A stretch of 64,000 bases of DNA from Bugula neritina (GCA_964035545.1 OZ037769.1:13174633-13238632), one strand, 5' to 3'. Counted from the stretch's first letter, positions 1 through 36,810 are shown. The notes: generated by a model from the letters alone, not told the origin. Translations and numbers: made by a program.

Positions 1-321
1 CTCCACTATTCTTTTGAATAGTGGGAGTTGTGCCGCCTCTCGGTATTTAGGACTAACGTATAACTCTTCCATACTGATTGATCTGCCCAAAAATACGCAA
101 TATCCATGAGTGTAAATTGCATAGCCTATGACTCTAGCATGAGCTGTTTCACATACTAAACAGCAAAACTTTGCGGGCTTACTGTAGTAGTCCTTAACCA
201 ACTTATTAATATCCGCTACATCGTTAGTTGCTAGACTAAGCTCTTCTGCTCTTTTCACAATCAGTGGATGGATTTCTGTGAAATCTTCCCCAGTAGCTTC
301 TCTTATAATCACTTCATCCAT
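1..321 (-). CDS. SAT1/SAT2-like GNAT protein, array copy 1 (3' part runs off the window; not in the ORF track)
   Basis: Manual translation from ATG at 321: MDEVIIREATGEDFTEIHPLIVKRAEELSLATNDVADINKLVKDYYSKPAKFCCLVCETAHARVIGYAIYTHGYCVFLGRSISMEELYVSPKYREAAQLPLFKRIVE. Open to the window edge and clearly paralogous to 6171-6674. Confidence 0.85.
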   Translation of the reverse strand, partial: MDEVIIREATGEDFTEIHPLIVKRAEELSLATNDVADINKLVKDYYSKPAKFCCLVCETAHARVIGYAIYTHGYCVFLGRSISMEELYVSPKYREAAQLPLFKRIVE

Positions 322-2390
322 GACTTATTAGTAGTCCCAGCTATAAGCACTACGCATGTAAAGGCCACCAGGCTTATTACTGAAGCAGGAGTGTACCTAC
401 AGAAAGGTTTCTAGTACTCTAGCTGATTAGAATGACATAATGCTGGGATACTGATAGGGGATAGATCTGCAACCAATCGCGTAGCTTTAAGAGTCTGTGA
501 TATATAAATGGCTGCAAAAATGCAGTCATTTATTTACATAATCATTATTACACTAGACTTTACAGAGTTAACAAAGAAGGAAGTATAGCCTTGAATCCTT
601 ATTTGAGTAAAAATATGGGTGCCTGTGCAGCCTCCTTTCCTCATATACAAGTGGAGCTTCACTACTACTCATAAAATATATTTAGTACAAGTGTACTTTG
701 ACCTTTCTGTTTATGGTCTTATATATCTATCACTGAATAATATGAGTGGGGAGGTTTACTTTTGTTTAGTACATTTTACGTGAGCCACCACGGGTATTTT
801 TGATAAATATGATATTATATATTACTTTAATGCATGCACTGCATCTTAAAATTATTTTTTACACGCATGTGGATTAAATATATTAATATAATAATATAAT
901 ATTGGCTTGTAGACTAAGTTTACGTCATTTAGGTAAAAGTATGGGTGGGTGTGCAGCCTCCTCTCCCCATATTCAAGCAGAACTTCTTTGTAACAAAAGT
1001 CACAGGTTTGTCTTATTAGATGAATTGTGTGCTGCAAGTTCTTTTCGAAAATCTATTTATTTATTGGAAGTCAAAATGCGGTTCTGGAAAAGATTTTCTG
1101 CTAAATTCACAGCACACACAAAATTCCAATTTCAATAGTTTTAAAAGGTGCCATCCAACATTTATTTGTGGTGCTCAAGCTTATAAGCGTGATCCATGTG
1201 TGTTTTAATTCAAGAAGCATGACTCCAAAATGATAAATTAAACAATAGGACAATTGCTTTATACCGATAACTATAGAACTTAGAACTGCATGCTTGTATA
1301 AGTCATGAAATTAATTGAATACAATTTATATGTTATATATTGTATTTCAACAGTATATATACATGTATTCCATGTAGCCTGTGCTCGATGTTTTTATTGA
1401 CAGATACATGAAGAGTTAAACTGTATATATAGCAATTTCCTAGTTTCCATTGCATCAAATGAATCACCCATCAATACCCCTTGATGAATTACTGTTTTCC
1501 TGTTATGCTAAATTTGAAATTTGTAAATTTCGAGAAAGATATACATTACATAATCTGGGGATAATCTCCTATAGTGAAAGCATGAATAGTATGACACAAT
1601 AATACTACATGCTTTTCTTTTTAGTGAGAGTTTTACACCCTTGTCATGTTTATAACTGCTATAAGAAGTGTATGCACTTATCATACGCCAACTTTATTTT
1701 ATTTGTATTTTAATATAATTTAGTGCAAAATATAAGCAACAGATATGTCATGCTGATTTTTTTCTTTTTATCACCTGAAATATACAGTTTAGCTAAAAAG
1801 ATATATCATGAACAGTCAGTACTTTTGTAAACATGTACCAGCTTAGTTCATGAATTTAAAATTAAAGAATTCTTGACACATTTCAGCTATGCAGCATTAA
1901 GGTAGTTAGTTATCGCTGACTTCCATTACATGCTATTCTTAGCTGCTGCAACACACAGCTTTATCGCTGACTTGGCTTAAAAGTTTAAACTTCAAATTTA
2001 CAAACAATGCAGAAAATACTTCCGAGAACAAAACTTTTAGAAGTACATGCAACTATGGTATTGAGAGTTGAGTGTGCCAGGAATGACTTATTGTGTTAGA
2101 TAGCAACAAGCATGGAGCAACAATCTTAATCTTTGAATTTATTGTTTACTCTTTGTCTTGTACTCTATCAAAATATCAAAACATGAGCTCTTTAAACCGT
2201 CTTCCTGGCAAGTGAAACTACTAACAATTATAATACAAGCAAAAATAACATAACAAAAAGCCAAAAACTAGCTGAACAAGCTGCAAAAAGCTAATATATA
2301 CTTTCATTAAAATATTGGGCAAACAGTTTTCTGTTATCTATACAGGTTATAATAATAAATCTATTAGTCAAAATTCTAACAAAAAATGTT

Positions 2391-2873
2391 TCATATTTGT
2401 GGCATTGGACCAAGTTTTTTAAAATCTCCTGCCTCCAAATTATACAGCAAATATCCATCCTCCTTGGACATTACAGACGTGCCATTCTCAACTAGAAATT
2501 TACTGAACTCTGTATTATCAGGAGCAGAACATTCCATCTGAAGACACTTGAATTCTAGAGCGATGTCGACTAGTCTGTGTAACATTGGGAGTTGTGCTAC
2601 ATCTCTGTATTCGCGTAGCACATAGAGTTCATCTATGTTAATAGACCGGCCAATCCACGATGAGTAGGCGTAAGAGTAACTCAGATAGCCTATAATCCTA
2701 GTGTCTAGTTCACAGGCTAAACAGTAGAACTTTGCGGGCTTGCTGCTGTAGTCCTCAATCAACTGCTTTATGTTAGGTACATGGCTAGTTGGCAGTCCAA
2801 ACTCTTCTGTTCTTTTTATTATCAGTGGATGAATTTGGGTGAAATCTTCTTCTGTAGCTTTCCTTACAAGCAT
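2391..2873 (-). CDS. SAT1/SAT2-like GNAT protein, array copy 2 (160 aa)
   Basis: The ATG at 2873 (MLVRKATEED...) aligns with the paralogue starts; the ORF-track start at 2969 is a GTG. Diamine-acetyltransferase signatures: R-x-A-x-x-x-D N-terminus, IIGYLSYSYAYSSWIGRSINIDELYV. Confidence 0.85.
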   Translation of the reverse strand: MLVRKATEEDFTQIHPLIIKRTEEFGLPTSHVPNIKQLIEDYSSKPAKFYCLACELDTRIIGYLSYSYAYSSWIGRSINIDELYVLREYRDVAQLPMLHRLVDIALEFKCLQMECSAPDNTEFSKFLVENGTSVMSKEDGYLLYNLEAGDFKKLGPMPQI

Positions 2874-3011
2874 TTTGCTAAGTTGAGTTCTTAATGTCAC
2901 CGCACAGAGGATATTTGAAATAGCGGAATGAGTTTGAGAGAGTTTGGTTATAGTACCCTCATTACTCACGAGTGTGTAGCAGCTAGTAGTTTTGGAAGTG
3001 ACTGAAGCAAT

Positions 3012-3152
3012 AGGGAATCACTAGAAGCAGCACAACGTTAGGGGCCATCCAATGTTTTATAGACATCTATGTTTGAAAAACCGAACTCAATACTCTACAG
3101 TCTACACTAATGCGCTCAGTGAACCCCAACTTTGTGCTGTTTCAAGCGACTC
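3012..3152. mobile_element. Small MITE, family A (degenerate copy)
   Basis: Imperfect terminal inverted repeats (TIRs) gaatcactagaagcagcacaacgtt...aactttgtgctgtttcaagcgactc, similar to the copies at 28169, 36986 and 41304. Confidence 0.55.
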
Positions 3153-6100
3153 TCAATGCAGCGATCAGCTGGTGGTGCTATTATTATGCTCTTTAACCCT
3201 TTGCTGGTAACCACGTGATCACCCACATGGCACTGCATGCAGAGAATAACTTGTTAACTTAGTTAATTCTTCAGTTGACATCTAGTGCTCTATCAGTACA
3301 GCACTAAATGCCCAAACTATAAGTCTACACTCTACTATTTACAATGTAACACAGAAATATAATAGTTGTAATGGTGCTGCAACTGACAAATTAAGCTAGC
3401 CACTCATATGCACAAATTCAGACAACACTGTGGGCTGAATGATGAAATTTGGTCAGAATTGTAAATAGAAATTGAATAACTGAACTGTTGATTTATATGC
3501 AAGACATATATTTGGTGTGATTGCTATCATTATAATAGCCATTTATTACAGAGTTGTATTAGAGTATACTAAGAATTAAATCCCATGCTCAAGATAATAT
3601 ATATAACTGTTATGTTTCTAGGTGTCAGTCAGAAATGTGAGATCTTTTGTTATTCCGTACTATAATTTTTTTCCTATTGCTTCATTTTGGTGCTATATTT
3701 GTGTTATTTTTAGTTTTGGAAATGAAAATTTGAAAAAAGTGTTGGGGACAAAGTTAGGAAATATTGTAGTGAATTTACGATTCACTATAATTAGTGGGTC
3801 TACTTATGCAAAGCCACTTCACCAGATTTCGTACAAATTGAAAAGACTTTATTATTGCGAATTATACAAGAAATAAAACTGTTAACACTAGTACACACGA
3901 TTACATAATATAGAGTGATTTACACACAACTGTACATTATTAGAACTCGATCCACTCTGCTTAACTCTAGGCTGCCTAACAAGCTTCCACTACACACTTG
4001 CAGCTCCGCCTACTAATTAATTGTTAGTCACATCCCATTGGTCAACACGGTGGTGCCATCCTAACGACATGATGCTGACTGCATCATGTAACTGTCCGAG
4101 ATAGAGTTATCCTTTCGATATAAACTAACTACTTGGGAACACAATACTAAACTCTTTACAATATCTCAGCACTTAACCAGCACCTTTTGCTGATAATCTT
4201 TTTAAACTACAATACTCAGTAGGCTTTGGTGGGGGGGGGGGTTATAAGTATAAGTATATAATGAACATTACCGTGTAGCCAGAGCTACAGAAATACATTT
4301 ATAATTTAAATGCTTTAGTTTACCAATAAGCATTCTTCCACCATTATTCATACCTAAAATTCATACATATATAATTGACCAGTTAAGTGGGCTTGGTGGC
4401 TAGAGCTGTCCAAGTACAACATAACTCACCTACTGTATGATTGATCTGTTGTCACCAGTAAATAATTAATGGGGGTTTATATCTCACCCAATCGACTGGA
4501 AGCAGGACTGCTTATAGCGTATTATTTGGTACTTTGTGGGCAAAACATATGAAACTCTGAAATTAAGTTTTTATGAGAAGCATTCACAGCCCTTCCCTGT
4601 AGTTTGATACATAATAAAATATTCTTTATTCCTGCACACAATTAACATTTGATAAACATCAATATGAGATTCAATCTATATGCATGACAAATTAATATAG
4701 TTTGGCATTAGCTGGTATGTTGGCATTGCAGTAACTGCAGTAAGGAAACCTAGCACAATATTAAAATAAAGACAGGCTGATTGTTGTAAAATTATCGTTT
4801 TGGCATAGTTAGGAGTTATGACATCATGGTTGTTAGTACAGTGTAAAAGGCGCAAGCTGAATGCAAATGTGAACAGCTGGGGCATTCTATAGTAAGGCTG
4901 GTGACTTGTGATAATTCTACAACTTCATAAATATGCCAGACTTTGATACTATAACATAATTGTTACTAAGCAATATCTGTAGTATTGAGATTTCTCTGTT
5001 ATAGATCCTATATATAAGTGTAATGTTGAAGGTCTTCGGTTTGATTTGTGGTAGGGGGGGGGGGGTACAAAAGTTCATTATATTCAGTAATAAGTTCCAT
5101 GTACCAAATTTAAAGACAAATACATAAATATATTATAGTATTGTCAACAAAGGCAATATAATAGTGCTTCATTCTACCCATTGAACTATAACCCCATAGT
5201 TTTAGTTTCAGTTCAGTGATTCTACCATTTCAGCAGTACTCATGCTAAAATACAAGGTGAAGGCCTATGTTTTCACTTAGTAATAGCATATTGTATAGTT
5301 TATAATGCACATAGTAATGGTCTATTGTACTGTGCTAATACCCTCAAGTATTGGCAGTTTTAGATCTTCGCAACAGTGTCTACAGTCCACACTGAATTAG
5401 AAATATTTATTTTCCAGTTCAAATTGAGCTTCTAGCTACATAAATATTATAGCTAGATAGATATTATATAGCCACATAGATATTATATAGCTACATAGAT
5501 ATTATATATAGCTATAACCAGCACTGAGTGGGTGTAAACCCAATGAGACTCCAAGGCCAAACACACCTCTTTACGTGCTGGTTAAATAAGAAATATCTTA
5601 AACTGTATAGTGTATACGTTCAATTTCAACAGCAAACAAAAATTGTTATTTATAAAAGTCTTTGAGGTACAATGTATATTTAATTCAAGCTTTAATATGT
5701 AGCTTTTAGCCTCTCAGCCAAATTAAATTCCATAAATACAATATAAGAAAAAACGAAAAAGACGTAGTTGCACACGCTGTATGCAATTTTTTCCAGATTA
5801 AGTTTGTTGAAAAATTTATTCACATGTTAATTCACATCACCATTTCCTTTAAAAAGAAGTAGCCAAATAATTTAGGAGCTTTATGGGTTTACAGAAACAA
5901 CATACAGTCATACACCATCTGTGTTGGTGCTAAACTCTATATAGCCCTTAATTCTACATTTAGACCCAGATCAGAGAAAGCTGAATATAGTTGAACTTCG
6001 GAAACTTTTTTGAAAAGACTTGGTTTGGAGCGAGTGTAAATTCTTGCAAAAACATAACTTATTTCGCTAAGTTCTCATTTTCAGCTAGTCCATTATAGCA

Positions 6101-6170
6101 CATGTCTCTAATGCTAAGGAGTGATTGGGTAAGGCAGTGCATTAGACATGCTGATACTAGATATTAGCAG

Positions 6171-6674
6171 TTAGTTGAAACCCAGGCAATGCTTCTCCTG
6201 GATTGTCGATTTGTCCAGACGATACTGCAAATATCCCTTCTCTTCAGAATAAACTGTAGTTCCATGCTTTACCCAAAACTCATGCATCTTCAAACTGTTT
6301 GTAGATGAAAGCCAAGCTAGTCTAAGATGTCCAAAGTTGTGAGTTATTTCAACTATTCTTTTGAACAATTGGAGTTGTGCCGCTTCTCGGTAATCGGGCA
6401 CCACGTAAAATTCATCCATACTGATAGATCTGCCCTCATGCACACAAAATCCAAATGTGTAAATCACATAGCCTATAATCCTAGTGTCTAATTCACACAC
6501 TAAACAATAGAACTTTGCGGGCTTGCTACAGTAGTCCCTAACCAGTTTGTTAATGTCCGAAATGCCACCATCTGACAATTTTAATTCCTCAGCTCTCTTA
6601 ACAATCAGTGAATGAATTTGAAAGAAATCTTTTTCTGCTGCTTCCCTTATAATTAAACCTTCGACTTGATTCAT
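6171..6674 (-). CDS. SAT1/SAT2-like GNAT protein, array copy 3 (167 aa)
   Basis: IIREAAEKD...KPAKFYCLVCELDTRIIGYVIYTFGFCVHEGRSISMDEFYV; single-exon ORF. Confidence 0.85.
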   Translation of the reverse strand: MNQVEGLIIREAAEKDFFQIHSLIVKRAEELKLSDGGISDINKLVRDYCSKPAKFYCLVCELDTRIIGYVIYTFGFCVHEGRSISMDEFYVVPDYREAAQLQLFKRIVEITHNFGHLRLAWLSSTNSLKMHEFWVKHGTTVYSEEKGYLQYRLDKSTIQEKHCLGFN

Positions 6675-7800
6675 GTTTGTTACTGGTTTTATCTGTGTCC
6701 ACTAGTGTAGCTAATACAACTTATAAAATATGATCTGTTAAAGTAATAAAATTATCACCCTTGGTAGACCTAGGCTATGGGTTATACAAGCAACTAGCAA
6801 TACCTTCACGCGCCACTGCACATGAACAACTAACAAAATGCAAGCATTATACATACACCCTGTACACATACACAAATACTTCTTCCTTTATCTTTGAGGT
6901 ATGTCTTTGTTTAAATATAAACCACCATAAGTATTTCACGCTAAGCATAAATTAAACCCAACACTTTATGCGGTATTAAAATATTTTATTATCTACTAAC
7001 TGTTGGAGAGTTGTCTGCCCAAATAACTTTGTTGTATAATACATTTTGTGCAAGCATGTCCTGAATTTATTTGAGAATTCTTAGTGACTCCAGATGATGT
7101 GCTCAGTAGGCTCACAGTCGGAGTTATGACACTACCCTGCTATAATGTGTTTGTTTGTGCGTGTACGTGTGTGTAGACAATGTTTTATGAAAAACGCCAA
7201 CTAACTGTTGAAGCCACTGTAGAAGTATATTTTTAGATTGTGATATTTCGGGCTTATAGCTTTGCATCATGAGATGTTGTTTGACTATGAAGTAAAGCAA
7301 CCACACTCTCAATCACAACTCAAAACCTTATAAGTCCAAGCTTATAAGCAAAATTTACATTTCCGTCCAATCAGAAACTAGAATCTATTAATTGTCCCCA
7401 AACTCTTTTAATTAATTCTGCAAAACTGTGATATCATAAGCATTGAAGTGGGCTTGTTATTCAGAATAGCTCATACAATTTCCATAAGTACAGGCAAAGA
7501 TTTCATGGGATGATCATTTTGAATAATTTGACAATCCAACATATTTAGATATACACTGATAGCAAGCAACCAGTTTTATATAGACTTTATAATAGTAATA
7601 TATAAAATATATAACTATATCAGTATTTTTGACTATAGTATATAATAAGAAGTTTTCTTTTACTCCAAGACCCAAGTATCACCACATAGATTTTATTCAT
7701 TTCAAAAACATATAAGAAAGCAATTTGGAATACAAAATTACAACCATTTATCAACTTAAAGTATCATTATATTTTAAAACAATTAACGTTTATTTTTTAG

Positions 7801-8292
7801 CTAATAGTCAAAATCATCCTGTAACACATAAAATTGAGAACTGTCCAAATGGTATCGAAGGGATCCATTTATTTCAGAAATAACTTTGGCTCCATTCTCA
7901 ATGGTAAACTTATGAAATTCAATGTCATTTCTGCAAGCAACACATCGTAACTGTTGGTATCCCAACTGCAGAGTAACATTGGTCAGTTCTTTCAACAGCC
8001 AGATCTGTGCTTCTTCTCTATACTCAGGTAATACGTAGAGTTCATCCATGTTTACACACCTTCCAGATCTTGATGAGTAGCCATAGGAGTAGATTGCATA
8101 ACCCACAATCATAGAACCAACTTCACAGACCAGGCAGAAGAACCTAGCTGGCCTGCAGTTATAATCATGGAGTAACTTTCTAATGTTTGGCACTCGACTA
8201 GCCGTAAGTTTGGTTTTTTCTGCCTTTTTAATAATTAAAGGGTAAATTTGCATCAAGTCTTTCTCACTAGCACTTCTGATAACTATAGACAT
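7801..8292 (-). CDS. SAT1/SAT2-like GNAT protein, array copy 4 (163 aa)
   Basis: IVIRSASEKD...RPARFFCLVCE...IVGYAIYSYGYSSRSGRCVNMDELYVLPEYR; single-exon ORF. Confidence 0.85.
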   Translation of the reverse strand: MSIVIRSASEKDLMQIYPLIIKKAEKTKLTASRVPNIRKLLHDYNCRPARFFCLVCEVGSMIVGYAIYSYGYSSRSGRCVNMDELYVLPEYREEAQIWLLKELTNVTLQLGYQQLRCVACRNDIEFHKFTIENGAKVISEINGSLRYHLDSSQFYVLQDDFDY

Positions 8293-9066
8293 TTTACCAT
8301 CAATTAATTTATTGAATTTAGCTGCCGATGTTTTTCAAGTGTATAATAAATTATGATGGAGCTTAGCCTGTCCAAGTTAGAGTGTTTATCTGTAGCTTCA
8401 ACTACCATTTATCTTTTGGTCCTTTTCTCCTGTCCTATATATATATATATATATATATATATTTTTTTTAGAAATTGTTTGTACACAAAATATATTTTTT
8501 GTTGTTAAATACGTAATTGAATAAAATAAATAGTGATAAAGCTAGAATGACTTTGCATATTTATTTATCAACAATTTTTTATGTAAATTTTTATTGTTCG
8601 GTATAAACTTGTTTTATAAAAAATGGGGTATGAATCTTTAATACTTAAAATAGTAGTATTATTAGACAGTTTCATATACCCCTTGGAAGAAAATATATAG
8701 TGGTTTGTGAGGTTCTACTGTAACAAGTATGCAAGATCAAATGATTCTTTTTAATATACAAGAGCTAATAGTTACACACACAACACGAACGCAAGGGTTG
8801 TTCAACAAGCAGCTTCTAGTTGGGGGTGAAGCACAATTTTAGTTTGAGAAACCTCAATTTACCATCATTATACAGCAAAACTTAGAACTATGCACAATAT
8901 TACAAAAATATTGGTGTTAATTAATTATTGATGAGGTCACTAATAAACTTTTTATTAATATAGTGACTGAATTCTTTATTTATTTGTAATAACCCAGATG
9001 TATACACTCCTCAACTAATACATATAGCAAAACAATAATGAAATAGCGTGGCGGTGGTAATAATAT

Positions 9067-9205
9067 TTAATGGGTACTGCCTAACATTAATTAATGGGTA
9101 CTGCCTAACATTAATTAATGGGTACTGCCTAACATTAATTAATGGGTACTGCCTAACATTAATTAATGGGTACTGCCTAACATTAATTAATGGGTACTGC
9201 CTAAC
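9067..9205. repeat. Perfect 24-bp minisatellite (TTAATGGGTACTGCCTAACATTAA) x ~5.8
   Basis: Identical head-to-tail units with no spacers. Confidence 0.95.
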
Positions 9206-9818
9206 GACAAAAATCAACTTCTAAATATCAATAATTCTTTGCTGTAGTTGTTATAACAGGAACTTGTGGTATTCCGCTACAACTTACTGTATAGCTGTTA
9301 CTAATATGGCTAAGCCTCAGTGATTTACTATAACAGTATTATATGCATATAATTTATGGTAATTACCTTGTAGATGACTCCTCTCGTTCTGGTACGTCTA
9401 CCTGAAGCTGGGTCTTACAGAGAAGTGACTTCAGATAGCAAGAGACTTCTTGCCGGTTAGTTTCACATCAGCTGCTTCAGGATAGGTTGCAGTATTACAA
9501 GGGTGGCTGCATCTTCATATAAGGATATAAAGTCACATAGCTGCAGGATCAGGGTGTTTGACCTATGGGAACTGACTTCAAAGCGAAAATGTAATTATAA
9601 TTGTTACGAAATTAGTGCATGTTACAGACAGTAGGAGACAGCTTGGCTATTGTGATGACATATTGTCTCTAATCTGTATACCAATGAAAAGTTAATTTAT
9701 GTGGGGGTGGAGCTGGGCGTTATGAGATGAGAATGTAGAATGAGAATTGAATAAATCTAAAGTCCATAATTCCACTACAACATAGTTACTGTGGATTCTC
9801 TTACAGGGTTAGTTTACT

Positions 9819-10295
9819 TTAGCTTGCTAGAGTGTTAAAATTAGATTTGTCTACCCTGCACTGGTGCCATGCCTCAGTTACTGTAACATCAACTGCACCA
9901 TGCTTTGTCCAGAACTCATTGTGGTCCGATGCTGGAGAGGTCCAAGCTGTTCTCTTGCAATCTTTTTCTATAGCAATCTCTACTAACCTCTTCAACAACT
10001 TATACTTCACTTCATATTCACACTGAGGCTGCGTGTGAAGGTCATCAATATTCAACACTCGAGCCATCCATGTTGAATAGCCGAATGAATAGATTGCATA
10101 TCCCACAATTCTATCACCTTCTTCACAGACAAGACAGTTGAATTTCGGAGGTTGACTTTTTAAACAGTCTATCGCCAATTTTTCTACAGTAGGTAGTCTA
10201 GTTACTCCCAGGTCTTGTCTCGTAGCATTCTCTACCATTAATGAATGTAGCTCTGTAAAATCTTTCTGTTCAACATCTCTAATGATGGCAGCCAT
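9819..10295 (-). CDS. SAT2-like (diamine/thialysine acetyltransferase family) GNAT protein, array copy 5 (158 aa)
   Basis: IVGYAIYSFGYSTWMARVLNIDDL matches the family YSTW-x-G motif, and GAVDVTVTEAWH resembles the SAT2-type C-terminus. A minus-strand acceptor (ttttag) just upstream of the ATG suggests a 5'UTR intron. Confidence 0.85.
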   Translation of the reverse strand: MAAIIRDVEQKDFTELHSLMVENATRQDLGVTRLPTVEKLAIDCLKSQPPKFNCLVCEEGDRIVGYAIYSFGYSTWMARVLNIDDLHTQPQCEYEVKYKLLKRLVEIAIEKDCKRTAWTSPASDHNEFWTKHGAVDVTVTEAWHQCRVDKSNFNTLAS

Positions 10296-11658: not shown

Positions 11659-12891
11659 TTAGCTATCAACAAGCATGTTGTCTGTGTATTGAAAAGCCTT
11701 GAAGTCGCATGTTTTTTCACCCTGAGCATTATAATGAAACATTTTGAAACAAACATCACAGTAGTGAGCTGGGTCACAGGGTGAGTGCACGCTGTTGGCA
11801 ACCATCCACTTCACGGGCCTGGTTTGGCACGCATTGCACACGGTGAACTTGAGCGAGCTTGTTGTAAGCTGGAGAGGATATTGTGAAAGCATCTGGCAGT
11901 CATCAGAGTGCATTAGTCTCATATCTGTGAACTGAATAACGTGCTCACAGTTTCCTTGGTGAATAAACACGTAGGGCATGCCAAACCGAATTTTCAGATC
12001 TATCATTTTAGTTAGGCTCATAACCTTAACTGGAAAGCTCTGCGTTACACCTTTTTTTCTTAACCATTCAACGATAGGTTTGCTGTAGTCTAAGGACTCT
12101 AGATTCTGCCGCTCCACATAAAATGTGTTTTCAATAAAGAATATGGCAGAAGTGAATAAGTCCTTTGCTCGCTTTGAGTTTTGCCCACTGTCAGGGGCCA
12201 TGCTAAAGTCTCCGGGAATTTCCAAATCTTTTGGACATTTGATGGCGCCACGAAGCTGGGTGAGACTTGTCTGAGTGAGAATGTGCACGAATAGATTTTT
12301 ATGACCTCGTCTAAAGTTTAACTTCCCAAATGTACTTTGAGGTTTGTGTATGTGTACAGTAATGATTGCTTCAGGTATAGTCATGAGCTGATCGTCTCGC
12401 TTGCTTTTCTTCTTCTTAAGCCTTTCTCGCTCATAATCCATGGCAGCGTACTTGTGCGCCAAATGCTCCTCCTGCTTTGTGCTGTAATCTAAGGCAATGT
12501 TTGACAGCTGCTGATGGGACTGATAGGACATTTTCCTCATATCTCTGTTATTTTTTGAATGTCTTATTGTTTGTAACTTGCACTCTGCGGGTACATCTTC
12601 CAATTTTATGGGTTTTAACGGAGTCATGCCCTCACAGTATAATGACTCTATAGGATTGGTTACAATAAACAATTCCTCTAACAATTCAGCAGGGATATGA
12701 TCGTTTGAACTGACTACCGAGCTGTAAGGAAGGGAGGCAACTCCCTGTAGTGTCAACTCATCTTTAGTGAGGGCAGCCCGCCATCTGGCAATAAAGTCTT
12801 TGATTGACACAAGCTTAGAGACATCAGCAGTTGCTGCTGATATTTCATCGATTTTTTTCAAAAGATCAGGTTCATGGTCCATAGAAGTCAT
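11659..12891 (-). CDS. SNAPC3: snRNA-activating protein complex subunit 3 (SNAP50), intronless CDS, 410 aa
   Basis: Family motifs SAIFFIENTFY and KIRFGMPYVFIHQGNCEH, plus the C-terminal zinc-binding region CNAC...PCDPAHYCDVCFKMFHY. Confidence 0.93.
   Translation of the reverse strand: MTSMDHEPDLLKKIDEISAATADVSKLVSIKDFIARWRAALTKDELTLQGVASLPYSSVVSSNDHIPAELLEELFIVTNPIESLYCEGMTPLKPIKLEDVPAECKLQTIRHSKNNRDMRKMSYQSHQQLSNIALDYSTKQEEHLAHKYAAMDYERERLKKKKSKRDDQLMTIPEAIITVHIHKPQSTFGKLNFRRGHKNLFVHILTQTSLTQLRGAIKCPKDLEIPGDFSMAPDSGQNSKRAKDLFTSAIFFIENTFYVERQNLESLDYSKPIVEWLRKKGVTQSFPVKVMSLTKMIDLKIRFGMPYVFIHQGNCEHVIQFTDMRLMHSDDCQMLSQYPLQLTTSSLKFTVCNACQTRPVKWMVANSVHSPCDPAHYCDVCFKMFHYNAQGEKTCDFKAFQYTDNMLVDS

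Positions 12892-34211: not shown

Positions 34212-36810
<2,599 letters not shown>

What the first reader, a model, noticed from the sequence alone, without database searches (positions are those of the whole stretch)
1..10295. Tandem array of at least five SSAT-like GNATs that have all lost the acetyl-CoA-binding loop: candidate pseudo-enzyme or neofunctionalised family
Seen: five same-strand, single-exon, stop-free paralogues. Where SAT1/SAT2 have YR-GxGIGS-x-IL (GNAT motif A, R/Q-x-x-G-x-G/A), these read YREAAQLPLF, YRDVAQLPML, YREAAQLQLF, YREEAQIWLL and CEYEVKYKLL. No glycine remains, the loop is about one residue shorter, and an acidic residue is often introduced. Established: this loop binds the CoA pyrophosphate through backbone amides. 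Inference: intact ORFs despite deep divergence imply selection for a function other than canonical acetyl-CoA-dependent acetylation, such as amine/polyamine binding, inactive partners in SSAT dimers, or use of another acyl donor.
Basis: partly seen in the sequence, partly recalled or inferred. Interest (0 to 1): 0.8.

Follow-up and report, generated by a model that had tools for sequence, protein, structure and literature searches.

The report
Tandem dead SSAT-like acetyltransferase genes
A bryozoan genome carries seven side-by-side copies of a polyamine-acetyltransferase-like gene that has lost every sequence hallmark of acetyl-CoA binding and catalysis yet is kept by natural selection, so it probably works by binding rather than by catalysis.

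Summary
The array has seven intronless minus-strand genes, not five; two lie just before the window start.

All are SSAT/thialysine-acetyltransferase-like GNAT-fold proteins:
- A profile hits human SAT2 and SAT1 at about 1e-17.
- The AF2 model has pLDDT 90 and TM 0.73-0.79 to SSAT structures.

All have lost the usual catalytic and cofactor hallmarks:
- No P-loop glycines remain, and the loop has a one-residue deletion.
- The catalytic Tyr (hSSAT Y140) is W, S, L or T.
- The motif-B Asn is gone.
- The general-base Glu is kept in only one copy.

Three canonical copies with these motifs intact sit elsewhere in the genome.

Six copies have Bugula neritina orthologues with dN/dS 0.13-0.30 (pooled 0.20, p 2e-28). 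The family is an old clade (support 99/93). Watersipora subatra has a single Gly-less gene in the same SNAPC3-WDR35 slot, so the array is a Bugula-lineage expansion. Copy number turns over: c6 is broken in B. neritina.

Best reading: a conserved pseudo-acetyltransferase family. Loss of activity is inferred only. No RNA data were available and no biochemistry exists. This is a new variant of a known kind (pseudoenzyme).

The parts
1..321 (-). c3: first 107 codons of a 165-aa SSAT-like gene. The rest lies before the window (full gene L002:2874-3371). Motif A reads YREAAQLPLF.
   Evidence: B. neritina orthologue is 93% identical, dN/dS 0.15.
2391..2873 (-). c4: 160-aa SSAT-like gene starting at the ATG (MLVRK). 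Motif A reads YRDVAQLPML. The catalytic-Tyr position is Leu.
   Evidence: The orthologue L011:5640-6122 starts at the same ATG, dN/dS 0.26.
6171..6674 (-). c5: 167-aa SSAT-like gene, used as the representative for the structure model.
   Evidence: Orthologue dN/dS 0.16-0.22.
6363..6398 (-). Degenerate motif A of c5 (PDYREAAQLQLF). It corresponds to hSSAT S98-I109 with one residue deleted and no glycine. The AF2 model shows it as the start of a continuous helix (residues 93-113) directly after strand beta4.
6273..6275 (-). Trp codon of c5 at the position of the catalytic Tyr (hSSAT Y140). The other copies have W, S, L or T here.
7801..8292 (-). c6: 163-aa SSAT-like gene, motif A YREEAQIWLL. It is intact here, but its B. 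neritina counterpart is broken.
9819..10295 (-). c7: 158-aa copy next to SNAPC3, the most divergent. Motif A reads CEYEVKYKLL (the Arg is also lost). It is sister to c1-c6 in the tree.
   Evidence: Orthologue L013:1596-2075, dN/dS 0.30.
11659..12891 (-). SNAPC3 gene, the upstream syntenic anchor of the array. It is not part of the family.
   Evidence: Pfam PF12251 6e-59. The same neighbour sits beside the single Watersipora gene.

Best explanation
The array encodes a bryozoan clade of proteins derived from spermidine/spermine (SAT1) and thialysine (SAT2) N-acetyltransferases. They keep the GNAT fold but have lost acetyl-CoA-dependent catalysis, which makes them pseudo-acetyltransferases. The ancestor was a single gene between SNAPC3 and WDR35, as still seen in Watersipora subatra, and it had already lost the glycines. 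In the Bugula lineage it was amplified by tandem duplication to seven genes, with continuing gain and loss of copies. The proteins are kept by purifying selection.

Shown by the data:
- SSAT-like fold and homology.
- Loss of the hallmark residues.
- Purifying selection.
- A single origin of the clade.
- Conserved synteny.
- Presence of canonical paralogues in the same genome.

Inferred:
- The pyrophosphate-binding loop is replaced by an N-terminal extension of helix alpha3, often with an acidic residue, so CoA is no longer bound.
- With the catalytic Tyr also gone, no acetyl transfer occurs.
- The proteins therefore act by binding as SSAT-type dimers. I estimate about 0.35 that they hold an amine or polyamine-like ligand. 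I estimate about 0.25 that they act as non-catalytic partners that modulate the canonical SSAT-like enzymes, in the manner of a prozyme.
For: Homology and fold:
- A single sequence hits SAT2 (2bei) at 3.7e-8.
- A family profile hits SAT2 at 2.8e-17 and SAT1 at 1.1e-16.
- The AF2 model with 89 sequences has pLDDT 90.2 and pTM 0.86.
- The top Foldseek hits are mouse and human SSAT1 and SAT2, TM 0.73-0.79.

Lost hallmarks:
- hSSAT G102, G104 and G106 correspond to E/D/K, A/V/E and Q/K, with a one-residue deletion. Y140 corresponds to W/S/L/T. E92 corresponds to D/S/E.
- In 62 canonical relatives these positions are Gly 87% and 95%, Asn 98%, Tyr 98% and Glu 69%. In the Gly-less clade all are lost and variable.
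- Entropy in the motif A and B windows is higher in the Gly-less set than in the canonical set (2.12 vs 1.91; 2.09 vs 1.98), although the set is less diverse overall.
- Pfam Acetyltransf_1 scores 0-21.7 bits for array copies and 56-73 bits for the three canonical paralogues.
- The model shows strand 81-91 followed directly by helix 93-113, with no loop.

Selection:
- dN/dS is 0.13-0.30 in six orthologue pairs with dS 0.16-0.26. The pooled value is 0.20, Fisher p 2e-28. The canonical paralogue pair gives a similar 0.24.

Age and origin:
- The 14 Gly-less rows form one clade at 99/93, and the seven copies form one clade at 100/97.
- Watersipora has the order SNAPC3, one Gly-less gene, WDR35, which is the same slot as here.
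- An unnamed run also has the gene tail-to-tail with WDR35.

Precedents from the literature:
- The human OGA pseudo-AT lacks the P-loop consensus, carries an Asp there and binds no AcCoA. Swapping the Gly residues in its active homologue abolishes binding (PMC3814719).
- SAT1 Y140F abolishes activity (PMC7271128).
Against: No biochemical data exist for any member. No RNA run was available, so expression is unproven.

PaiA/LcGNAT-type polyamine acetyltransferases have degenerate P-loops and are still active (PMC10416765). In GNATs the pyrophosphate is held by backbone amides, so glycine is not strictly required.

Five of seven copies keep the Arg of the motif. The W-type copies keep a Lys near the 3'-phosphate site.

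The helix-extension claim rests on an AF2 model. No canonical control was folded the same way.

Orthologue comparisons show no difference in constraint between the N-terminal (acceptor-side) half and the C-terminal (cofactor-side) half: 8.3% vs 7.3% differences, p 0.6. So there is no positive evidence for a preserved ligand site.

Dimerisation, whether with itself or with the canonical enzymes, was not testable.
Confidence: 0.6

Rival explanations
1. The proteins are still active acyltransferases. They bind acetyl-CoA or another acyl donor in a non-canonical way, use different catalytic residues, and have a new substrate range that diversified through tandem duplication.
For: Degenerate P-loops occur in active PaiA/LcGNAT-type polyamine acetyltransferases (PMC10416765). 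Purifying selection is as strong as on the canonical paralogues. The GNAT fold is intact. The Arg of motif A is kept in five of seven copies, and an acidic residue is kept at the general-base position in five of seven. Three residues are newly conserved in the clade: P52, K54 and C60.
Against: The active degenerate-loop enzymes keep the catalytic Tyr and Glu (PMC10416765). Here Tyr, the motif-B Asn, all three Gly residues and one loop residue are lost together. The replacement residues differ between paralogues (W/S/L/T; E/A/V/K), which is not what a new conserved catalytic site would show. An acidic residue sits at the loop position, as in the non-binding OGA pseudo-AT (PMC3814719). c1, c4 and c6 have Glu where SSAT has the CoA-phosphate-binding Arg.
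Confidence: 0.27
2. The copies are neutral or decaying duplicates without function. Their open frames are intact only because they are young.
For: No RNA evidence was found. c6 is frameshifted and split in B. neritina. An extra c5-like copy there starts with TTG instead of ATG. Copy number differs between the two genomes.
Against: dN/dS is 0.13-0.30 with p from 2e-3 to 5e-9 in six independent orthologue pairs. Paralogues are saturated at synonymous sites (dS above 1) yet keep open frames. A syntenic orthologue persists in Watersipora and in at least one further lineage. The clade is deep. No relic fragments lie between the genes in this genome.
Confidence: 0.05
3. The proteins are prozyme-like regulators. 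Dead subunits heterodimerise with the three canonical SSAT-like enzymes and tune polyamine or thialysine acetylation. This is a sub-case of the pseudoenzyme reading, listed separately because it predicts a specific partner.
For: Canonical paralogues exist in the same genome. SSATs are obligate intertwined dimers; the large rmsd at high TM to the crystal dimers is consistent with a swapped C-terminal strand. Two-domain SSAT-like proteins that pair a degenerate domain with a canonical one exist in a shrimp and in chalcid wasps. Dead paralogues regulate polyamine enzymes in trypanosomatids (PMC5201418, PMC3663545).
Against: Identity to the canonical paralogues is only about 18-25%. The fused proteins belong to other clades. 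No co-expression or interaction data exist. Seven diverging copies are more than a simple regulator needs.
Confidence: 0.25

Closest known systems
Spermidine/spermine N1-acetyltransferase (SAT1) and thialysine N-epsilon-acetyltransferase (SAT2) of animals
   Same: Best sequence and fold matches. The length is similar, about 160-170 aa. They share fold residues including the FxCLVxE strand, GY, YS and GR..L.D.YV. The C-terminal G(W/Y)..(F/Y)(R/K)(L/I)D strand is also present.
   Different: The array proteins lack the R-x-x-G-x-G loop glycines and have one loop residue fewer. They also lack Y140 and the motif-B Asn. E92 is kept in only one copy. Pfam Acetyltransf_1 is at or below threshold. They form a separate clade.
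C-terminal pseudo-acetyltransferase (pseudo-HAT) domain of human O-GlcNAcase
   Same: A GNAT fold without the P-loop consensus and with an acidic residue at the loop. It was shown not to bind acetyl-CoA, and it is conserved (PMC3814719).
   Different: It belongs to a different GNAT subfamily and is a domain of a large enzyme. The proteins here are free-standing, SSAT-derived, multi-copy and untested.
Prozymes of trypanosomatid AdoMetDC and deoxyhypusine synthase
   Same: They are catalytically dead paralogues of polyamine-pathway enzymes, are kept by selection, and act through oligomerisation with the active enzyme (PMC5201418, PMC3663545).
   Different: The folds and organisms are unrelated. 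The resemblance is in proposed logic only, and no interaction has been shown here.
PaiA / LcGNAT-type polyamine-class acetyltransferases with degenerate P-loop
   Same: They are polyamine-acetyltransferase-like GNATs whose P-loop departs from the consensus (PMC10416765). 8osp is among the fold hits.
   Different: They are active and keep the catalytic Tyr and Glu. The array proteins have lost the Tyr in all copies.
Two-domain SSAT-like proteins of Penaeus japonicus, chalcid wasps and a cuttlefish (P0007, P0018, P0023, P0019)
   Same: They are SSAT-like domains with a Gly-less motif A. In the shrimp and the wasps the degenerate domain is fused to a canonical domain.
   Different: They are separate clades in the tree, so of independent origin. 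Most keep the FY tyrosine. They are fused proteins, not tandem genes.

Membership tests
GNAT superfamily (fold) | Mixed alpha/beta GNAT fold with the beta4/beta5 core | tested here: met
   The AF2 model has pLDDT 90.2. Foldseek gives at least 500 GNAT hits, with top TM 0.73-0.79 to SSAT1 and SAT2.
SSAT / thialysine acetyltransferase family (homology) | Significant full-length sequence similarity to SAT1/SAT2 | tested here: met
   The profile hits 2bei at 2.8e-17 and SAT1 chains at about 1e-16 over residues 2-157. The nearest named canonical relatives are annotated thialysine or diamine acetyltransferases.
Active GNAT acetyltransferase | Motif A pyrophosphate loop R/Q-x-x-G-x-G/A | tested here: not met
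   The loop reads R-E-A-A-(gap)-Q or a variant of it. No Gly remains in any of the seven copies, and one residue is deleted.
Active GNAT acetyltransferase | Catalytic Tyr (hSSAT Y140) | tested here: not met
   It is W in c2, c3, c5 and c7, S in c1, L in c4 and T in c6. Tyr is present in 98% of 62 canonical relatives.
Active GNAT acetyltransferase | General-base Glu (hSSAT E92) | tested here: inconclusive
   It is E in c3, D in c4-c7 and S in c1 and c2. Only 69% of the canonical set have Glu here.
Active GNAT acetyltransferase | Motif B Asn (hSSAT N133) | tested here: not met
   The aligned position is S, D, A or W. Asn is present in 98% of the canonical set.
Active GNAT acetyltransferase | Binds acetyl-CoA and transfers acetyl to an amine | not testable with these tools
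   This needs recombinant protein, binding assays and activity assays.
Pseudoenzyme (as defined in PMC10211241) | Homologue of an enzyme family that lacks the conserved catalytic motifs | tested here: met
Pseudoenzyme | Retained as a functional gene under purifying selection | tested here: met
   dN/dS is 0.13-0.30 in six orthologue pairs, pooled 0.20, p 2e-28. A syntenic orthologue exists in Watersipora.
Pseudoenzyme | Expressed as protein | tested here: inconclusive
   The only run that holds the stretch is DNA, with uniform depth. No RNA run is on record.
Prozyme-type regulator | An active paralogue is present in the same genome | tested here: met
   There are three canonical SSAT-like ORFs with intact motifs, in L008, L010 and L009.
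Prozyme-type regulator | Physical complex with the active paralogue that alters its activity | not testable with these tools
   No multimer prediction or interaction data were available.

The most novel reading that the evidence does not exclude
Bryozoans have evolved a dedicated family of dead SSAT subunits, and Bugula has amplified it sevenfold. These proteins would act as polyamine or diamine sensors or buffers, or as prozyme-like partners that set the activity of the canonical SSAT-like enzymes. If so, this would be the first non-catalytic regulatory layer found on the catabolic (acetylation) arm of animal polyamine metabolism. It would parallel antizyme inhibitor and the trypanosomatid prozymes on the biosynthetic arm.
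Probability: 0.25. Interest if true: 0.7.

Novelty: new variant of a known kind. Interest (0 to 1): 0.5.

Why it matters
Dead paralogues already regulate the biosynthetic side of polyamine metabolism (antizyme inhibitor, prozymes). I found no description of a conserved dead SSAT. This family is a clean natural case. The active and inactive paralogues sit in one genome. There is a single-copy syntenic orthologue in one bryozoan and a seven-gene array in another. There is also clear purifying selection. It shows which SSAT residues can be lost while the fold is kept. It also provides a small, easily expressed set of proteins for testing what a GNAT fold does once it no longer binds CoA. The practical consequence is for annotation. 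Public records name these genes SAT1, SAT2 or 'thialysine N-epsilon-acetyltransferase-like', which probably overstates their activity.

Tried and rejected
- RNA evidence: the run search returned one holder, X1, and no RNA run. Laying X1 showed uniform depth of about 100-120 over genes and spacers, so it is DNA, probably the source sample. It says nothing about expression.
- Logan contig L012 (SRR4020084) carries the c3 orthologue with 1.1 kb of upstream spacer. It cannot be told apart from genomic DNA, so it was not used as transcript evidence.
- The first AF2 run used only the 15 family sequences and gave pLDDT 71.8 with a weak beta4. It was replaced by the 89-sequence run.
- Accession searches in the literature did not resolve the organisms of the SRR255697xx runs. 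Only the marine-biofilm origin of P0010 was found.
- I tested whether the acceptor-side half is more constrained than the cofactor-side half. Orthologue differences are 8.3% vs 7.3%, p 0.6, so there is no support and the argument was dropped.
- I looked for relic copies between the genes in this genome and found none at E 1e-3.
- The ML dN/dS script did not return. NG86 was used instead.
- The longer GTG-start ORF for c4 (2391-2969) was rejected in favour of the ATG at 2873, which the B. neritina orthologue shares.
No spliced models were involved, because all genes are single-exon.


Full report
**What is there**

The window is G000:C5:13174633-13238632 of a 216-Mb assembly.

A six-frame search of the whole assembly finds seven adjacent copies on this contig and nothing else close. 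The two extra copies are c1 (L004:1498-1983) and c2 (L002:1474-1980). They lie just before the window, and the full c3 is L002:2874-3371. All seven are uninterrupted ORFs of 158-168 codons.

The array is bounded by SNAPC3 on the same strand (window 11659-12891, Pfam 6e-59). On the other side is WDR35/IFT121 on the opposite strand (L022 matches the B. neritina and Watersipora WDR35 regions).

**What family it is**

A single copy hits human SAT2 (2bei) at 3.7e-8, and also hits thialysine acetyltransferases and SAT1. A 15-sequence profile raises this to 2.8e-17 for SAT2 and about 1e-16 for SAT1 over nearly the full length.

An AF2 model built on an 89-sequence alignment is confident (pLDDT 90.2, pTM 0.86). 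Its best Foldseek matches are mouse and human SSAT1 and human SAT2, with TM 0.73-0.79.

Pfam's Acetyltransf_1 scores the array copies only 0-21.7 bits, against a cut-off of 20.7. In four of the seven copies the match stops before motif A. Three canonical SSAT-like ORFs elsewhere in the same genome (L008, L010, L009) score 56-73 bits over the whole profile.

**What has been lost**

The HMMER alignment to hSSAT maps the motif as follows.

| hSSAT position | Array residue |
|---|---|
| R101 | R (Q in c2, E in c7) |
| G102 | E, D, K or Y |
| G104 | A, V or E |
| I105 | deleted |
| G106 | Q or K |

So no glycine remains and the loop is one residue shorter. Five of seven copies place an acidic residue next to the Arg.

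- Y140 is W in c2, c3, c5 and c7, S in c1, L in c4 and T in c6.
- The motif-B Asn is replaced.
- E92 is E only in c3, D in c4-c7 and S in c1 and c2.

In 62 canonical relatives the two main Gly positions are 87% and 95% Gly. The Asn is 98%, the Tyr 98% and the Glu 69%. In a non-redundant Gly-less set all of these are lost and variable. Fold residues such as R10, D16, D47, F55, E61, G68, Y72, G81 and G138 (c5 numbering) are shared between the two sets.

The Gly-less set is less diverse overall. Even so, its entropy in the motif A and motif B windows exceeds that of the canonical set (2.12 vs 1.91 and 2.09 vs 1.98). This is the pattern expected if these sites are no longer used.

Both AF2 runs model strand beta4 (81-91) running straight into a helix from residue 93, with no intervening loop. 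I could not fold a canonical control, so this point is inference.

**Are the genes alive?**

The word-index protein search found relatives only in Bugula neritina data. The B. neritina assembly contig (L011) and a JGI contig (L013) carry the orthologous array. Intron and spacer identity between the two genomes is about 84-86%, so they are different but close species.

NG86 estimates for the orthologue pairs:

| Copy | dN/dS |
|---|---|
| c1 | 0.17 |
| c2 | 0.13 |
| c3 | 0.15 |
| c4 | 0.26 |
| c5 | 0.16-0.22 |
| c7 | 0.30 |

- dS is 0.16-0.30 across these pairs.
- Each pair departs significantly from neutrality (p from 2e-3 to 5e-9).
- The pooled value is 0.20 with p 2e-28.
- The canonical paralogue pair gives a similar 0.24.
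- Older paralogue pairs are saturated at synonymous sites yet keep dN/dS at 0.1-0.4.

The genes are therefore under purifying selection. Expression could not be checked. The only run that holds the stretch is a DNA run with uniform depth, and no RNA run is on record.

**How old is it, and where did it come from?**

A profile search of 1.84 billion representatives found a tight group at 95-132 bits. Its members also lack the glycines, and most read FW where SSATs read FY:
- P0008 is Watersipora subatra XP_067931106.1, annotated 'thialysine N-epsilon-acetyltransferase-like'.
- The others come from unnamed Logan runs and a marine-biofilm metagenome.

In a careful ML tree the 14 Gly-less rows form one clade (ultrafast bootstrap 99, SH-aLRT 93). 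The seven copies of this genome form a clade within it (100/97), with c7 sister to c1-c6.

In Watersipora a single Gly-less gene lies between SNAPC3 and WDR35, which is exactly the slot that holds the array here. One unnamed run also shows the gene tail-to-tail with WDR35. Another has two tandem copies.

The simplest history has three steps:
1. The catalytic motifs were lost once, in an ancestor of these bryozoan lineages.
2. The gene stayed single-copy in Watersipora.
3. It was amplified in the Bugula lineage.

**Turnover of copies**

In B. neritina the c6 counterpart is broken. One contig (L023) keeps its 5' two-thirds with a frameshift, and homology ends at codon 119. The last 39 codons sit as a relic after a c5-like copy. 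dN/dS of c6 against the broken copy is 0.43, and two otherwise invariant residues are mutated in the broken copy.

B. neritina also has an extra c5-like copy that starts with TTG. No relics lie between the genes in this genome. Individual copies are therefore dispensable, while the family is kept.

**Interpretation**

The combined loss of the P-loop glycines, a loop residue, the catalytic Tyr and the motif-B Asn, with purifying selection and intact canonical paralogues in the same genome, fits the definition of a pseudoenzyme (PMC10211241).

The closest experimentally characterised analogue is the pseudo-acetyltransferase domain of human O-GlcNAcase. It lacks the P-loop consensus, has an Asp at the loop and binds no acyl-CoA. 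Transplanting its loop residues into an active homologue abolishes binding (PMC3814719). SAT1 Y140F is inactive (PMC7271128).

The main caveat is that PaiA/LcGNAT-type polyamine acetyltransferases have degenerate P-loops and are still active, although they keep the Tyr and Glu (PMC10416765).

My probabilities are:
- about 0.6 for a non-catalytic protein,
- about 0.27 for a still-active enzyme with an unusual cofactor site,
- about 0.05 for neutral decay.

Within the non-catalytic reading, two roles are open:
- Ligand binding by SSAT-type dimers.
- A prozyme-like partnership with the canonical enzymes. Precedents are PMC5201418 and PMC3663545, and fused dead-plus-canonical SSAT-like proteins occur in arthropods.

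I found no positive evidence for a preserved acceptor site.

**Novelty**

I found no description of a conserved Gly-less SSAT clade in the literature searches. Public annotations call these genes SAT1, SAT2 or thialysine acetyltransferase-like. Pseudoenzymes and pseudo-GNAT domains are known, so this is a new variant of a known kind. It is moderately interesting and directly testable with recombinant proteins.

An earlier scan note called this genome a bryozoan. The B. neritina and Watersipora matches bear this out.

Noticed in passing
window 11659-12891 (-): An intronless 410-aa ORF encodes SNAPC3 (Pfam PF12251, 6e-59). The same gene sits beside the single Gly-less gene in Watersipora (L018:6968-8221).
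   Followed up: partly
window 9067-9236 and 9137-9530: A perfect 24-bp tandem repeat (5.8 copies) lies between c6 and c7. Next to it is a stretch with 10-30 times the normal contig depth in run X1 (1200-3200 vs about 110), so it is a high-copy repeat or transposon fragment.
   Followed up: no
window 35166-35717: An (AC)276 microsatellite. It explains the GC-skew and AT-skew spike at 34-36 kb in the composition profile.
   Followed up: yes
window 6487: Run X1 holds a short alternative contig with T>C at this position. On the coding strand this would change c5 residue D63 to Gly. It may be an allele or cross-mapping of a paralogue.
   Followed up: no
L011:2299-2802 and L013:5283-5786: B. neritina has an extra c5-like copy that is absent from this genome. 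Its frame is open but it starts with TTG instead of ATG, and the public annotation calls only an 82-aa product.
   Followed up: partly
L023:2850-3613; L011:1594-1710; L013:4577-4693: The B. neritina counterpart of c6 is frameshifted near its start and split. Its last 39 codons lie downstream of a c5-like copy, which suggests a duplication was inserted into it.
   Followed up: partly
P0007 (Penaeus japonicus), P0018 and P0023 (chalcid wasps), P0019 (cuttlefish): These are two-domain SSAT-like proteins. One domain (both in the cuttlefish) has a Gly-less motif A. They fall outside the bryozoan clade, so the degeneration is independent.
   Followed up: partly
contig of P0017 (SRR25569782; no DNA served): Two tandem Gly-less genes (164 and 165 aa) sit on a 1.9-kb contig of an unnamed organism. 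Tandem duplication of this gene is therefore not confined to Bugula.
   Followed up: no
L008, L010 (contig C4, 6 kb apart) and L009 (contig C2): Three canonical SSAT-like genes with intact motifs, also intronless. Two of them are close neighbours. L010 and L009 are recent paralogues (dS 0.45, dN/dS 0.24).
   Followed up: partly
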